Shown: piece by piece, positions 20,108 to 27,795 of the stretch
Layout: each line of letters begins with the position of its first letter
Numbering within the stretch: the first letter of the stretch is position 1
Source of the DNA: Euprymna scolopes
Lineage: Eukaryota
Reading direction: 5' to 3' (one strand)
Assembly (NCBI GenBank): GCA_053919585.1
Contig: CM132783.1
DNA length: 64,000 nt
Made by a program: the position numbers and the translations under genes
Notes under the pieces: generated by a model
Seen by the model: the letters and a program-made list of their open reading frames with translations, nothing else
Told to the model about the DNA's origin: nothing
The model's database searches: none

Positions 20108-20345
20108 TATTTTTTATTGTGACGCTATCACTAGACGGCTTGCCTACCACGGCTTAAGAGAGTCCCATCTACCCTCAAGAAAAGGATAGACCGCGCCAGT
20201 GTCTCAACCTGGTATTTTACCTTACGGTACATACAACGCCTTACCATTCCAAAATGGTCGCCCATCTGGTACTGGCCAGGTTCAACGTTGCTTAACTTCG
20301 GTGATCTGACGAGAATTGGTGTGTCAACGTGATTATGCCGTTTTG
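20108..20345 (-). mobile_element. 5S rRNA-derived SINE3-like copy or 5S pseudogene with unrelated tail
   Basis: 20345-20228 reads cggcataatcacgttgacacaccaattctcgtcagatcaccgaagttaagcaacg..agtaccagatgggcgacc, clearly 5S-like; about 120 nt body ending aataaaaaa. Confidence 0.75.
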
Positions 20346-20979
20346 AGTAATACAAACTACATCTAAAATTGCTAATGTAGTTTATCACTTGAACTATTCG
20401 TCAGAAAACGCTTTTGAAATCACTTTAAATCCGTTAATAATTACATTGCACAATCATTAGCCTGTCCCACTAACCGTTTTGTATAAAATGATGTCATCCG
20501 GTAATATTTTAACTTATATAAAACATTATTATCGTAAATTAAGTACATTCTAGTAAACAGCTGTACGAGTGTTCATTGAAGATATAAAAATATGTATAAA
20601 AAATTCAAATGTAGTTTTCTATCCTTAATTATAAATGATTCTATCCTTAATTATAAATGATAAAAGACCACTCTTAACAGCAGCTCAATTCAACATGGAC
20701 GCAACATCTTTTCGATATAACCAGATTACATGGTTTACAGATGTATGAATGGTAGAGTCAGCATTCCAGTGATTTATTTAAGTAATTATAACAAGTGATC
20801 GTAAATTGCTTTCTATATCGAATATATTTAAAACTTTCCTCTTCTACGCATGCGCATTTTCGAAGAGTATTCATATCACCCGCTGCTCTCTCCCTCTCTC
20901 CGTACACACACACACAAACACACACACACACACACACGCACACACACATACACACACACACACACATATATATATATGT

Positions 20980-21185
20980 GTGTGTCAATGGCCTATTGAT
21001 GCGTCAAGTGCTTGTCACCTTCCTCTTCCAGTCCCTACCGCTGGCTAGCCTATGCAAAAAGGAAGCAGAGTGCGTAAGTCTTCCCTGCCAGTACGTAGCC
21101 TCTCCATAGGAAAGCTCCATGTAGTGCCTCCCCGTGGCGACACATGTAAATTAAGTACCTTGCGGACTCAAGCAGAACTACAGGA
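20980..21185 (+). ncRNA. HDV-like ribozyme at RTE 5' end
   Basis: P1 gtgtgtc(20980-86)/gacacat(21139-45); P2 tgtagt/actaca; P3 gcc/ggc with L3 tccccgt; P4 cttg/caag; J4/2 C21173-aga. Confidence 0.7.
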
Positions 21186-21788
21186 GACTCGGAGGTGGTC
21201 TGCCCCCAGACATGCGGCATGCTAGGCCCATCGTTGTATGGACAAGCCCTGATGCCCATGAACAGGCCCCCAGCTATGGGTAAATAGTACCACTCCCTTG
21301 TGGTTATTCGTTGGTTCGATAAAGGCTAAGGGAGTAAACCCTAACAGAAAATCTGGAGTGTAGCCCCACAGGCAGACAAGTTCTGTACTCAGCCTTGTTC
21401 TGGTAGCTACTGCAGTCAACCTGGTGCCGGACGTACTGGTACTTCCATTCCTCTGGGCAACACCAGCAAGACCGAGAGGGGGATTCTGACGATTGGGCAA
21501 CCCAGTCTCTCCACAAATCTGCCCTGGCCAGCGCCCTGGAGAGAAAACTTCAGCTATGCATCTGTATAGGACTAAACAGGGGAGCGACAGTCACTCGTTA
21601 TAAGCCTACAGCTCAATTGGCGTACAGCTGGGCGCCAGGGGTCGGTCCTAACGGTGGGAGTAGTTATTTAATTTCATTGGACAGCTACCGCCCGCCACAA
21701 AGCTGAGCAGCCCTCAGTCAGTAAGGTGCTATCCCGCCACTGGCCACCTACCCTACTGGGTGCGTAGGGTATAGGATGATTCCAACAA

Positions 21789-24700
21789 GTGGCCAGTAAC
21801 CATTGTACCAAACAAAACCAAAAGAAACAAAAAGAACCCAACACTCAGGCTAGGGTGCTGGAATGTTCGTACTATGACGATTGGCCTATCTACCGACATC
21901 TCCGATATTCGAAAAACTGCCATCATCAACAACGAGCTATCGAGACTCAAAGTAGACATTGCTGCACTCCAAGAAACACGCTTAGCTGACACCGGATGCC
22001 TAAAGGAATCGGACTATACCTTCTTCTGGCAAGGAAAACAGGAAGAGGAGGTCCGGGAACAGTGTGTTGGTTTCGCAGTCAGAAACTCACTGCTTCATAA
22101 CATACAACTCTCTGATTCAGCTACTGAGCGCCTAATCTCACTACGACTGAACACCACAGATGGAACAATTAATCTATTATGTGTGTACGCCCCAACACTC
22201 GCAGCGCCTGACGAAATCAAGGAGCACTTCTACACACAGCTGGATAGCACCATCAAGGCATTTCCATAAAATGAAGACCTGATTATACTTGGGGACTTTA
22301 ATGCACGTGTTGGTGGCAACAGCGATGCATGACCAGCTGCCTTGGTAACTTTGGAGTGGGCAAATGCAATGGTAACGGCCAGCGCCTTCTAGAACTCTGT
22401 GCCTACCATGACCTCTGCATTACCAACACATTCTTTGCTGCCAGACCGCATCACAGAGTGTCCTGGACACATCCCAGATCAGGGCGTTGGCACCAGCTCG
22501 ATCTAATCATTACTAGACAAAGGTACCTAAAACATTTTCTGATGTCTAGAGCCTTCCACAGTTCTGATTGTGATACAGATCATTCCCTAATATGCAGTAG
22601 AGTCGAACTTCAACCCAAAGATTTCTACCACACTAAACAGGAAGGTGTTGCCCGTATTGATGTTAGCAAAACCACATACTCAGATCGCAATGCGAAATTC
22701 AACGAGATGTTAACCCCCACCTTCAAAGGAGACAACACCCGGACTGCATCTGAACAGTGGGAAACACTGAAAAATGCCATCCACTTTACAGCTCTCAAAT
22801 CTTTGGGAGGAGGACAGGTAGCAAACACAATGACTGGTATGATTCCAACTCTGCTACCCTCAACCCTCTGATTGAGGCAAAGCGTTTGTCCTTGCTCTCA
22901 TACAAGGCCAACCCATCTCCTACATCGCTGGCTGCACTGAGGCTTTCCAAAAGGGCAGTTCAAAAGGCTGTAAGAGAAGCTGCAAACAACTACTGGATGG
23001 AGCTCTCCAAGTCTATCCAGCATGCAGCTGATACAGGAAATATAAAAAATATGTATAACGGGATCAGGAGAGCTACAGGACCCATAATTAACAAAACTGC
23101 TTCACTGAAGTCTAAATCGGGTGAACCCATACTAGACAAAGTTAAATAGCTAGACAGATGGGTTGAACACTACTCCGAGCTTTACTCCAGGGAAAACATG
23201 GTACATCAGTCCGCTCTGGATGCCATTGATCGTCTACCGCTGATACATGAGCTCGATGAGGAGCCTTCCATAGAAGAACTATCCTGGGCAATAGATAGAC
23301 TGCCATCAGGAAAAGCCTCAGGAAGACTATATTCCAGCAGAGGTCTTAAAAATTGGAAAGGCTAGCCTGCTTGAGCCCCTCCATAGTCTTCTGATACAGT
23401 GTTGGAGAGAAGGCTCAGTGCCTCAGGGCATGAGAGACGCAAATATCTCTCTACAAACACAAAGAGGACCGCGGTGACTGCAACAACTACCGCGGTATCT
23501 CACTGTTGAGCTTCGTTGGCAAGCTATTCGCACGTATAGTATCACTGCGACTACACGTTCTTGCCGGCCGAATCTACCCAGAATCTCAATGCGGCTTTCG
23601 TTCAGAGAGATCAACAATCGATATGATCTTCTCTCTACGCCAATTGCAAGAGAAGTGCAGAGAGCAAAACCAGCCTCTGTATGTTGCCTTCATAGACCTG
23701 ACCAAGGCATTCGATCTCGTGAGCAGAGATGGACTATTCAAAATTCTCCCACTGATCGGATGCCCACCAAAACTCCTCAACATCATAAGATCCTTTCATG
23801 ATGGCATGAGGAGCACTGTGCAATTTAACGGTGGCATGTCTGCTGAGTTCGGGGTGAGAAGTGGTGTCAAACAGGGTTGTGTGTTGGCCCCAACACTCTT
23901 CGGCATCTTCTTCTCCCTACTCCTGAAGCATGCTTTCAAGAACACAACGGATGGTATCTGCTTGCACTCCAGGTCAGATGGTGGTCTCTTCAACATCGCC
24001 AGACTCCGCTTCAGGACAAAGAACAGGACAGTTCGAATAAGAGACATGCCGTTTGCAGATGATGCAGCTATAGCATCGCATCAGGAAGATGGTCTTCAAA
24101 GACTGATGGACAGGTTTGCTAATGCTTGCAGCCTGTTCGGTCTCACCATTAGCCAGAAGAAAACCCAAGTCATGGGACAAGCAACCGCCTCCCCACACAG
24201 CATCACAATCCAAGGCACACCACTAGAGGTTATACGTCAGTTTCAATATCTAGGTTCCACTGCTTCAGACACCCTCTCATTGGACGTGGAGCTAAACAAA
24301 AGGATTGGAAAGGCATCCACAACCCTCTCTAAACTAACTAAAAGAGTCTGGGAAAACAGGCACCTTACCACTTCCATCAAGATGACCGTCTACAGAGCGT
24401 GCATCCTCAGTGTTCTACTGTATGGGAGTGAATCCTGGACTACATATTCAACACAAGAGAGGAAACTCCAGGTCTTCCATATGAGGTGTATACGAAGGAT
24501 ACTTGGTATCACATGGCAGGACAGAGTGAGTAATACTGATGTTCTGCAGAGAGCGGGCATCCCATCCATTTAATCCCTACTGCGTGAGCAACATCTTCGC
24601 TGGCTGCGCCATGTGCACAGGATGGACGATGGGCGCATCCCTAAAGACCTTCTCTATGGCGAGCTTGCCTCAGTTTCAAGAAAGAGGGGGCGACCTCATC

Positions 24701-25011
24701 TTCCAAACAGGGATGTCTGCAAGTGTGACATGAAGGCTTTCTCGGTGGACAGGAATACATGGGAAGCCTCTGCAGCTGACAGAACTGCCTGGAGGAAAAT
24801 GATACGCCAGGGGATTATCATCAGCGAGAGGACCCTCCATGTTGAAAACGCTGCAAGGAGAGCTAGGCGAAGAGCGAGTGTACAGGCGGAACAGCCGGAC
24901 GAAGCGGCAAATTGCATAACAACCTTCGTATGTCAAGACTGTGGCAGACTATGCAAATCAAGAATTGGTCTCTACAGTCACACAAAAGGGTGCATACAGG
25001 CAACATCTTAA
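21789..25011 (+). pseudogene. RTE ORF: AP endonuclease, reverse transcriptase, C-terminal zinc finger; several stops and frameshifts
   Basis: CWNVRT, IAALQETR, LGDFNARVG, DCDTDH, FIDLTKAFD, GVKQGCVLAP, FADD, CQDCGRLCKSRIGLYSH; stops at 22267, 22330, 23147, 24571. Confidence 0.95.
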
Positions 25012-25089
25012 TACGGCGCTGATCCATAGTCGTTTCGACTGACGGATGCCACACACACCCACACATATATATACATATATATATATATA

Positions 25090-25690
25090 CTCGCAAAAGT
25101 ACCGTCGTTGACTGGGTTCAAAAACAGCCTACAGAAAATGGACTCTGATTTATGAAAGTATGATAGGTTATGATAAGGAAGGGTTGTAAATTTGGGTTTA
25201 ATTTGGGGATATCAAAACCAAAGCAAAATATGATGAAAGTAAACATAAAATAGATAAACCCCATAATTTATTATACCATACCTGTTCACACTGAAACACT
25301 TATCACAGTATTCTTTGGATCTACATTAAAAAACCTTGTTAAACTTTGTGACATATTTCCATTCTATGGAGGTCAGGTGCGAACGAACACCCCATAATTT
25401 TATTATACAATATTTCTTCAAACTGAAACATAATTATCAAAGTATACTTACGCAGATAGATATGAAAAGTCTTTATTAAAGTTTGTGCCTATTTCCATTC
25501 TATGGGGTCCAGGCGCGAACGCAGACCCCAGAATTTAAATGAACCACCGTTCTGCCAGATCAAACATACCCATTCCTGTGTCTCGATACATCTTCTATCA
25601 TTATATGTAATCAGTTTTTTTTTAAATAGTCAACCATATAGGAGCCTATTCGTGACCAGACACACACACACATTCAGCTTTATATTATAT
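25090..25690 (-). mobile_element. Helitron/DINE-like non-autonomous element with internal duplication of about 132 bp
   Basis: Decayed 3' hairpin gtaccgtcgttgactgggt; duplicated ccccataattttattata..ccattctatgg at about 25260 and 25390; (CA)n near 5' end. Confidence 0.5.
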
Positions 25691-26909: not shown

Positions 26910-27795
26910 ACTTTTTAGTTACCACGTTCTGATAAATCAGTCACCCATTTTGTAAGCAATAAAAACGCGGTATATCAAAACCATAGAAAGTAAAAATAAT
27001 GAGTCTCTACCGCATTTGTAAGTCAGAAATATATTTGTTTCTCAAAGAAAAAAAAGAGAGAGAACAGGACTTTTTTTTATTGTTTTCATGAAAATAAAGT
27101 TTCGAGATTTTTAATTATTTTTTTTTTTTTACTTATTTAGTCAGTTTGTGTTTGTTTTGTTTTTTTTAAATTGTTTTTGTGAAAGGTGAGTTTTTTTTCA
27201 AAACTTTTGTTTTGTTTCTTTTTAATTTTTTTTAAAGTATTATAAATTTCACTAACATGCTGGAGAAATGTTTAATAATTTGATATTTTTTTAGATTAGG
27301 TCCACCTCCACAATTTTCCTTTCAATGACGACATTTATAGATCTCCGAGTATGCTGAACACGCAAATTGCATTGAAATTTTGCGGAAATAAATAGTTGTA
27401 TTATGCATTGTATTCTTCGGCGGCCATCTTTTTACGTGCACACGCGCCATAAACAAATACACACACGTACAAAAGATGGCCGCCAAAGATTACAATGCAT
27501 AATACAACTTTTTATATCTTGATAACTACTTATTTCTGCAAAATTTCGATGCGATTTTCGTATTCAGCATAGTCGAAAACCATTTCAAGTCGTCATTTGA
27601 AAGAAAATTGAGGAGGTGGAGTGGACCTAATCTAAAAATTTACCAATAACTTTTAATCCCGTACGCCTCCCGATACATTGCTTCGTCAACATGCGACCAT
27701 TTTATATCTCCCGAAGACACTTCCGTATTTAGAAAAAATAAATAAATAAATAAATAAAAAGCGACCGATTTACCAGAACGTGGTAACTAAAAAGT
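26910..27795. mobile_element. Nested inverted-repeat (MITE-like) structure
   Basis: Outer IR actttttagttaccacgttctg (26910) / cagaacgtggtaactaaaaagt (27795); inner long palindrome 27288-27638. Confidence 0.8.

What the first reader, a model, noticed from the sequence alone, without database searches (positions are those of the whole stretch)
20980..21185. HDV-like ribozyme whose predicted cleavage site coincides with the RTE 5' boundary
Seen: a nested double pseudoknot can be drawn with P1 starting G20980 in a G-U wobble, a J1/2 of about 130 nt, P2 6 bp plus extension, P3/L3 gcc-tccccgt-ggc closely resembling HDV gcc-uccucgc, and a C in J4/2 (21173). P1.1 has only one G and P4 is short. The P1 5' strand (gtgtgtc) merges with the flanking (TG)n. 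Known: RTE 5' UTRs can carry HDV-like ribozymes that release the element from host transcripts. Inference: this copy is 5'-complete.
Basis: partly seen in the sequence, partly recalled or inferred. Interest (0 to 1): 0.7.

Follow-up and report, generated by a model that had tools for sequence, protein, structure and literature searches.

The report
Self-cutting RNA heading a jumping gene
The first ~207 bases of a decayed 4.1-kb retrotransposon copy fold into an HDV-type self-cleaving RNA whose predicted cut site is the element's first base, and compensatory changes in related elements support the fold; it is a solid new example of a device already known from RTE, R2 and L1Tc elements.

Summary
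Window 20980-21186 can be drawn as an HDV-like nested double pseudoknot, and the fold is not a chance fit.

- **Shared 5' end.** Thirty distinct sibling copies in this 5.9-Gb genome end at the same 5' base. Eighteen start GTGTGTC and nine start one base later, after unrelated flanks.
- **Independent second family.** A second family in the same genome starts GTGATGT. That is exactly complementary to the 7 nt after its own P3, so four P1 pairs differ from the window family by changes on both sides.
- **Covariation.** In five lineages, P2, P3 and P4 are 94% paired, against 27-49% when the partners are slid. Nine of 18 pairs carry double changes.
- **Catalytic core.** The C at 21173 and the L3 motif UCCYCGY are conserved in every lineage.
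- **Chance.** A strict descriptor hits once in the window's 128 kb, and about once in 2.1 Mb of random sequence.

- P4 is 21151-56 with 21166-71, not CTTG/CAAG.
- P2 is 10 bp with a bulged A.
- J1/2 is a structured domain.

The window copy is 5'-complete but dead. Its ORFs are broken, J1/2 has a 14-nt deletion, and P4 has a private mismatch.

Cleavage was not tested, and the RNA data were contigs only. The scan had already noted this device on other pieces of this genome. Verdict: a new member of a known kind.

The parts
20980..25065 (+). Whole non-LTR retrotransposon copy (family A): about 0.9 kb of 5' UTR, a broken APE+RT ORF, the 3' end ...GACTGACGGATGCC and an (AC)n tail at 25051-25065
   Evidence: GC island. 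RVT_1 hit in the window ORF. Siblings align over about 4.1 kb at 95-97% identity and end in GCC(AC)n. A sibling ORF carries Exo_endo_phos and RVT_1.
20980..20986 (+). P1 5' strand GTGTGTC. The predicted cleavage is 5' of G20980, which is the element's first base.
   Evidence: 18 of 30 distinct copies start GTGTGTC and 9 start at TGTGTC, with unrelated flanks. TSDs bracket GTGTGTC...(AC)n in L039 and L031. The 7-bp pairing was verified by script.
20987..21114 (+). J1/2 peripheral domain, 128 nt here and 143 nt in siblings. A closing helix CCTAT (20992-96) with ATAGG (21106-10) is possible.
   Evidence: The MFE folds of L002, L043, L062 and B each show a helix that closes the domain. A (CCTAT/ATAGG) and L043 (GTTGAT/ATCAGC) differ by paired changes. 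This copy lacks 14 nt plus 1 A.
21115..21125 (+). P2 5' strand CTCC-A-TGTAGT, with A21119 bulged
   Evidence: Pairs with 21177-21186. Six of 10 pairs show double changes across lineages.
21126..21138 (+). P3 (GCC/GGC) closing L3 (TCCCCGT)
   Evidence: L3 is UCCYCGY in every lineage. P3 G-C becomes A-T in family B. About half of the siblings have TCCCCGC, so T21135 looks like CpG decay.
21139..21146 (+). P1 3' strand GACACAT, followed by G21146 (the only P1.1 G)
   Evidence: The next two bases are GT in family A and L062, and GG in L043, L045 and family B.
21151..21171 (+). P4 hairpin TT(A)AGT / ACTCAA with loop ACCTTGCGG. A21153 is a private mismatch; siblings have G.
   Evidence: Five pairs were tested, two with double changes. 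The 21153 A>G difference is seen in siblings and in public contigs.
21172..21176 (+). J4/2 GCAGA, with the candidate catalytic C21173
   Evidence: G and C are invariant in all lineages; the pattern is G-C-N-R-A.
21177..21186 (+). P2 3' strand ACTACA-GGAG

Best explanation
Window 20980-21186 is the 5'-terminal HDV-like self-cleaving ribozyme of an RTE-like (single APE+RT ORF) non-LTR retrotransposon family.

Proposed mechanism:
1. The element has no separable promoter evidence, so it is probably transcribed as part of a longer host or read-through RNA.
2. The RNA folds into a nested double pseudoknot made of P1, P2, P3/L3, a one-pair P1.1 and P4. A structured J1/2 domain brings P1 and P2 together.
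3. C21173 in J4/2 then catalyses cleavage 5' of G20980.
4. This releases an element RNA whose first base is the element's first base, which is why full-length copies share one terminus.

Shown here: the fold, its covariation, and the coincidence of the P1 start with the terminus in two families. Inferred: catalysis, co-transcription, and any role in translation.

This particular copy is a dead relic of that process.
For: Shared terminus:
- More than 1,386 candidate copies exist in the genome.
- 27 of 30 distinct copies start at G1 or T2 of GTGTGTC, after unrelated flanks.
- TSDs bracket the element.

Second family (B):
- More than 1,187 candidates in the same genome.
- It starts GTGATGT, a perfect complement of ACATCAC, which sits directly after its P3.
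- Four P1 pairs differ from family A by double changes, and P3 changes from G-C to A-T.

Related elements on metagenome contigs (L043, L062, L118) keep P1 and P2 with different sequences.

Formal counts on alignment A7:
- 94.4% of cells are paired, against 27-49% when partners are slid.
- 9 of 18 pairs show double changes.
- 0 of 500 shuffles reach the observed values.
- RNAalifold alone recovers the same P2, P3 and P4.

Other support:
- L3 is UCCYCGY, and the G-C of J4/2 is invariant.
- The strict descriptor hits only this site in 128 kb, and about 1 hit in 2.1 Mb of random sequence.
- The J1/2 closing helix covaries. This fits the published 'pinch' role of structured J1/2 domains (PMC4908430).
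- HDV-like ribozymes cutting at the 5' end are reported for RTE, R4, L1Tc and baggins elements (PMC3774820, PMC6765202).
Against: - No cleavage assay was done.
- The RNA data available were assembled contigs, which cannot show RNA 5' ends.
- No Rfam HDV-type model matches, even at E<=10 on the 221-nt stretch alone.
- P1.1 has one G-C pair in this family and in L062, rather than two.
- The G1-U wobble is replaced by G1-C in L043 and family B.
- One related contig (L045) has the core but no P1 partner at its 5' region.
- The covariation rests on only five or six lineages.
- This copy carries a 14-nt J1/2 deletion and a P4 mismatch, so its own activity is uncertain.
Confidence: 0.85

Rival explanations
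1. It is a conserved structured 5' UTR with the HDV-like double-pseudoknot fold that no longer cleaves. The fold would serve another purpose, such as recruiting the translation machinery or the element's own protein, or protecting the 5' end. The shared terminus would come from an internal promoter that starts transcription at G1.
For: - Covariation shows the structure, not catalysis.
- P1.1 is reduced to one pair, and the G-U wobble is not kept in two lineages.
- The whole ~0.9-kb 5' UTR is about 78% conserved between family A and L043 without an ORF, so other RNA functions are likely present.
- IRES-like roles have been proposed for R2 and L1Tc HDV-like ribozymes (PMC6765202).
Against: - The residues that matter only for catalysis, namely the J4/2 C and the L3 UCCYCGY motif, are invariant across lineages whose helices have changed sequence.
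- In two families with different P1 sequences the terminus is exactly the first base of P1. A promoter would not enforce that.
Confidence: 0.1
2. It is a chance fit: a hand-drawn pseudoknot in a GC-rich 5' UTR next to a (TG)n tract, with no structural meaning.
For: - A loose HDV descriptor with J1/2 up to 900 nt finds several hits per kb in unrelated UTRs.
- The P1 5' strand is low-complexity GT repeat.
- No Rfam hit.
Against: - The strict descriptor gives 1 hit in 128 kb of window and about 1 in 2.1 Mb of random sequence.
- 9 of 18 core pairs covary, and 0 of 500 shuffles reach the observed values.
- Family B's non-repetitive P1 (GTGATGT/ACATCAC) sits at its own terminus.
Confidence: 0.02
3. 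The family's ribozyme is real, but the copy in this window is catalytically dead. It would be only a fossil with no present activity, even if it is transcribed.
For: - A private 14-nt deletion and a 1-nt deletion in J1/2. The MFE of this copy's J1/2 no longer shows the closing helix.
- A private A21153-C21169 mismatch in P4.
- ORFs broken into five or more pieces.
Against: - P1, P2, P3, L3 and C21173 are all intact.
- From my own knowledge of HDV ribozymes, not checked in a paper here, P4 is largely dispensable.
- The CCTAT/ATAGG closing pairs are still present in this copy.
Confidence: 0.4

Closest known systems
HDV-like ribozymes of RTE-type retrotransposons (drz-Agam-2 family of Anopheles gambiae; Ruminski et al. 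2011, as cited in PMC3774820, PMC4908430, PMC6765202)
   Same: - Nested double pseudoknot at the very 5' end of an APE+RT non-LTR element.
- The cleavage site is the first base of P1 and of the element.
- A large, structured J1/2 insert; the P1.2 'pinch' domain of drz-Agam-2-1 is described in PMC4908430.
   Different: - No detectable sequence or Rfam-model similarity.
- The host is reported as a mollusc (earlier scan note; run labels), with relatives on marine and freshwater metagenome contigs.
- J1/2 is 128-195 nt.
- P1.1 has a single G-C pair in this family.
- G1-C replaces the G-U wobble in two lineages.
- The 3' tail is (AC)n.
- The Ruminski paper itself was not held, so detailed comparison with drz-Agam-2 is from secondary citations.
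R2 element 5' HDV-like ribozyme (Eickbush and Eickbush 2010; PMC3774820)
   Same: It processes the element RNA out of a co-transcript. It has the same fold, and P1 can evolve together with the cut site.
   Different: - R2 has a restriction-like endonuclease and inserts only in 28S rDNA.
- Many R2 ribozymes cut 9-36 nt upstream, inside the 28S sequence.
- Here the cut is at the element's own first base, and insertion sites are dispersed and often in microsatellites.
Genomic HDV ribozyme
   Same: - Order of helices, and a 7-bp P1 with a G1-U wobble.
- A 3-bp GCC/GGC P3.
- A 7-nt L3 UCCCCGY, against HDV UCCUCGC. Family B and L062 have UCCUCGU.
- A G-C-N-R-A J4/2, like HDV G74-C75-G76-A77-A78. The HDV sequence is recalled from memory and was not retrieved here.
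   Different: - J1/2 is over 100 nt instead of a few nt.
- P4 is short.
- P1.1 is reduced.
- It sits in a retrotransposon, not in a circular satellite RNA.

Membership tests
HDV-like self-cleaving ribozyme | Nested double-pseudoknot topology: P1(5')-J1/2-P2(5')-P3-L3-P3'-P1(3')-P1.1-P4-J4/2-P2(3') | tested here: met
   All strands lie in the required order, with P2/P3 and P3/P1 abutting. RNAalifold recovers P2, P3 and P4.
HDV-like self-cleaving ribozyme | Helices supported by covariation | tested here: met
   9 of 18 core pairs have double changes; 94.4% of cells are paired against 27-49% when slid; 0 of 500 shuffles reach this. Four P1 pairs change between families A and B.
HDV-like self-cleaving ribozyme | Cleavage site is the first nucleotide of P1. 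In retrotransposon members this is the element's 5' end. | tested here: met
   The termini of family A (GTGTGTC) and family B (GTGATGT) coincide with the P1 starts. The cleavage itself was not observed.
HDV-like self-cleaving ribozyme | G1-U wobble closing P1 at the cleavage site | tested here: inconclusive
   Present in the window family and in L062. It is G1-C in L043 and family B, and C-G or U-G in L118.
HDV-like self-cleaving ribozyme | P1.1: two G-C pairs between L3 and the bases after P1 | tested here: inconclusive
   GT follows P1 in family A and L062, giving one possible G-C. GG follows it in L043, L045 and family B.
HDV-like self-cleaving ribozyme | Conserved catalytic C in J4/2 and a C-rich 7-nt L3 | tested here: met
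   The G-C of J4/2 is invariant and L3 is UCCYCGY in all lineages.
HDV-like self-cleaving ribozyme | Match to a curated Rfam HDV-type covariance model | tested here: not met
   No HDV, CPEB3 or drz family hit at E<=10 in 10 kb or in the 221-nt stretch. The long J1/2 insert is a likely reason, so this is weak evidence against.
HDV-like self-cleaving ribozyme | Mg2+-dependent self-scission giving a 5'-OH product | not testable with these tools
   It needs an in vitro assay. The RNA runs were contigs only.
RTE clade of non-LTR retrotransposons | Single ORF with an N-terminal APE endonuclease and an RT; no gag-like ORF1; no RNase H | tested here: met
   Exo_endo_phos and RVT_1 lie in one ~1,050-aa ORF in siblings and homologues. 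There is no conserved Met-initiated ORF in the 0.9-kb leader.
RTE clade of non-LTR retrotransposons | 3' end of short simple repeats rather than poly(A) | tested here: met
   The element ends in GCC(AC)n in all full-length copies. The tail is (TAC)n in L062 and L126.
RTE clade of non-LTR retrotransposons | RT phylogeny places it inside the RTE clade | not tested
No named reference RT sequences were on hand.

The most novel reading that the evidence does not exclude
The P1 5' strand of these ribozymes may be tied to the element's microsatellite biology.

- In family A the first bases (GUGUGU) are the complement of the element's own (AC)n 3' tail.
- Copies sit preferentially in (TA)n/(TG)n tracts.
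- In L045 the 3' tail repeat contains the same heptamer (GATACTG) as its P1 3' strand.

If this is real, the ribozyme's substrate helix, the 3' tail and the target microsatellite would co-evolve. The same few bases would serve for cleavage, for priming of reverse transcription, and for microhomology joining at the 5' junction.
Probability: 0.12. Interest if true: 0.6.

Novelty: new member of a known kind. Interest (0 to 1): 0.4.

Why it matters
It adds a well-supported, high-copy HDV-like ribozyme lineage outside insects and vertebrates, with natural covariation data for P1, P2, P3, P4 and the J1/2 closing helix. The host is apparently a mollusc, with relatives on many aquatic metagenome contigs.

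It explains why thousands of full-length copies share an exact 5' end.

It gives annotators a marker for 5'-complete copies that Rfam models currently miss.

The natural variants are useful material for ribozyme structure-function work. They include one-pair against two-pair P1.1, G-U against G-C at the cut site, bulges on either P2 strand, and a hairpin inserted in P2 of L118.

It does not change the known picture of how such elements are processed.

Tried and rejected
- **Rfam scans**: no HDV-type hit. I judged this uninformative because of the 128-nt insert.
- **Loose structural descriptor on 56 homologous UTRs**: swamped by chance hits and abandoned in favour of homology plus covariation.
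- **MAFFT alignment of whole ribozymes starting at G1**: the P1 5' strands were not put in register, so P1 was scored by script and only the core was scored with the pair-count tool.
- **nhmmer with the 5' UTR profile on all fetched contigs**: only L043, L045, L062 and L118 carry a recognisable homologue. The other roughly 85 contigs have different leaders, which were not analysed further.
- **Covariance model R1 on the own genome**: only families A and B appeared among the 150 candidates scored, so no third lineage was found.
- **L118-based DNA search of the own genome**: nothing found.
- **RNA evidence**: all runs are assembled contigs, so they show no starts or ends. They only show that the family occurs in RNA-labelled libraries, and they confirm the window's private differences (21053, 21095, 21153).
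- **Ruminski et al. 2011** was not held.
- **Hidden ORF1 in the leader** was considered: no conserved Met-initiated ORF was found.
Only the tools' own consensus line for the 5' UTR alignments appeared.

Full report
**What is there.**
- Window 20980-25065 (+) is a GC-rich island in AT-rich DNA.
- It holds the remains of an APE+RT non-LTR retrotransposon. An RVT_1 domain lies in a 355-codon ORF, and the other ORFs are fragments.
- The genome is 5.9 Gb and holds at least 1,386 candidate matches to the first 421 nt.
- Full-length siblings are about 4.1 kb and 95-97% identical to the window copy. One carries a 942-codon ORF with Exo_endo_phos and RVT_1.
- All full-length copies end in ...GACTGACGGATGCC followed by (AC)n.

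**The observation.**
  - P1 20980-86 with 21139-45, with a G-U wobble at the first pair.
  - P2 21120-25 with 21177-82.
  - P3/L3 GCC-TCCCCGT-GGC at 21126-38.
  - C21173.
- P2 continues as CTCC/GGAG (21115-18 with 21183-86) past a bulged A21119.
- A deliberately loose descriptor finds many such drawings per kb in unrelated leaders, so drawability alone means little.
- A strict descriptor finds only this site on both strands of the window. It required:
  - G at +1.
  - A 7-bp P1 with at most one G-U.
  - P3 abutting both P2 and P1.
  - A 7-nt L3 with CC.
  - A G after P1.
  - P2 of at least 6 bp.
  - A C just before P2's 3' strand.
  - J1/2 of at most 200 nt.
- That descriptor gave 0 hits in 1.28 Mb and 1 hit in 0.82 Mb of random sequence.
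- The strict descriptor was written after seeing the hit, so the real weight lies in what follows.

**The terminus.**
- In 30 distinct copies with unrelated flanks, the homology begins at:
  - GTGTGTC in 18 copies.
  - One base in (TGTGTC after an A) in 9 copies.
  - Two bases in (GTGTC), or with another base at the first position, in the 3 others.
- Two further copies seen (L009, L019) lack about 10 nt at the 5' end and were not among the 30 counted.
- Target-site duplications bracket GTGTGTC...(AC)n in L039 (ATTGTTATTAT) and L031 (ATATATCTTA).
- The window copy is therefore 5'-complete. The GT at 20978-79 and the surrounding (AC)n(AT)n leave a 2-nt ambiguity.

**Relatives and covariation.**
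- The sibling protein has hundreds of homologues at 56-71% identity. Most are on ~4-kb contigs from aquatic metagenomes, and two hits are named from Branchiostoma and a snail.
- Contigs fetched through these homologues were searched with a profile of the leader.
- Four contigs carry a homologous ribozyme: L043, L045, L062 and L118.
- Searching the own genome with the L062 leader uncovered a second high-copy family, B, with more than 1,187 candidates.
- Eleven family B copies with unrelated flanks all begin GTGATGTGGTGTG....
- The family B core reads ...ACC-TCCTCGT-GGT-ACATCAC-GG.... The 7 nt directly after its P3 are therefore the exact complement of the first 7 nt of the family.
- Relative to family A (GTGTGTC/GACACAT), four P1 pairs have changed on both sides. 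The outer P3 pair changed from G-C to A-T.
- P1 in the other lineages:
  - L062 has GTGGTG/CACCAT.
  - L118 has CTGGTGG/CCACCGG.
  - L043 keeps family A's P1, but with G1-C.
- For the nested part of the fold (P2, P3, P4) on a MAFFT alignment of five lineages:
  - 94.4% of cells are standard pairs, against 27-49% when the 3' partners are slid by 1-3 columns.
  - 9 of 18 pairs carry changes on both sides.
  - No shuffle of 500 reaches the observed pairing, double-change counts or covariation score.
- RNAalifold was given no structure and returned the same P2, P3 and P4.
- L118 keeps P2 as CTCTCGTAC paired with GT...ACGAGAG, with a 22-nt hairpin inserted in the 3' strand.
- L3 is UCCYCGY throughout, and J4/2 is G-C-N-R-A with the G-C invariant.

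- The P4 that covaries is TTGAGT/ACTCAA (21151-56 with 21166-71), with loop ACCTTGCGG. The 4-bp CTTG/CAAG inside that loop is not supported.
- The position of the C is unchanged.
- J1/2 is not a loose linker. Its minimum-energy folds in A, L043, L062 and B all close the domain with a terminal helix.
- Family A's CCTAT/ATAGG corresponds to L043's GTTGAT/ATCAGC through paired changes. [quoted passage not shown]

**State of this copy.**
- Relative to its siblings it has lost 14 nt (GTGTGGGGTACTGT) and one A in J1/2.
- It has T for C at the last L3 base, a CpG-to-TpG change shared by about half the family.
- It has A for G at 21153, which breaks one P4 pair, and its ORFs are broken.
- Public contigs show the same differences at 21053, 21095 and 21153.
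- The catalytic core is intact. Whether this copy could still cut is open.

**What speaks against.**
- Nobody has seen this RNA cut.
- The runs found were all assembled contigs and cannot show RNA ends.
- No Rfam HDV-type model matches.
- P1.1 has one G-C pair in family A and L062.
- The G-U wobble is not kept in L043 and family B.
- L045 has the core but no P1 partner, most simply because it is a decayed copy.
- The number of independent lineages is small.

**Comparison with what is known.**
- HDV-like ribozymes that cut at the 5' end are reported for R2, R4/Dong, L1Tc, baggins and RTE elements (PMC3774820, PMC6765202, citing Ruminski et al. 2011, which was not held).
- The present case works like those and meets the structural criteria of the family.
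- Its assignment to the RTE clade rests on architecture only: a single APE+RT ORF, no ORF1, and a simple-repeat tail.
- Earlier notes of this scan (s1-241403, s1-295656) describe the same device on other pieces of this genome. The 276-nt one is probably family B, whose ribozyme spans 277 nt in L138.

**Verdict.** This is a real, well-supported HDV-like ribozyme, a new member of a known kind.

Noticed in passing
L135-L146 (G000, e.g. L138:1401-1677:+): A second high-copy family (B) in the same genome carries its own HDV-like ribozyme of about 277 nt. Its P1 is GTGATGT/ACATCAC, its P3 is ACC/GGT, its P1.1 is GG and its J1/2 is 195 nt. Its common 5' end is GTGATGTGGTGTG. One copy (L135) has a rearranged 5' end, GTGGTGTGGTGTGATG.
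   Followed up: partly
window 20904-20979 and 25051-25090; flanks of L002-L030: The element's (AC)n tail is the complement of its GUGUGU 5' end. Many copies sit in (TA)n or (TG)n tracts. This copy lies between (AC)n(AT)n on both sides, so its TSD cannot be delimited. In L045 the 3' tail repeat contains GATACTG, the same heptamer as its P1 3' strand.
   Followed up: partly
window 21187-21890 (leader downstream of the ribozyme); L043:500-1180: The ~0.9-kb 5' UTR is about 78% identical between family A and L043, which share 70% protein identity, yet it has no conserved Met-initiated ORF. This suggests further functional RNA structure, or an unconventional start.
   Followed up: partly
window 20228-20345 (-): A 5S rRNA match of 50.8 bits, above the gathering score of 38, lies 630 nt upstream of the element, inside a local GC rise. 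It could be a 5S gene, a pseudogene or a 5S-derived SINE head.
   Followed up: no
window 27386-27518: A long, near-perfect hairpin of about 130 nt matches palindromic microRNA models (mir-586, MIR4208) on both strands, below their gathering scores. It looks like a MITE-type inverted repeat.
   Followed up: no
L118:372-477: In this related metagenome contig the P2 3' strand is split by a 22-nt hairpin (GT-[TCAAAATGCAGTCGTTTGCATG]-ACGAGAG), and P4 is a 7-bp stem. This is a natural three-way variant of the fold.
   Followed up: partly
window 21071-21107 (loose ends): Contigs in several public runs match only 21071-21107 and then continue with a different core (...CAAGACTCCTACAGTGCCTCCACGT...). 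This points to at least one more ribozyme lineage in related organisms that I could not fetch.
   Followed up: no
window 25258-25536: A 136-bp tandem repeat (2.1 copies, 78% matches) lies just downstream of the element.
   Followed up: no
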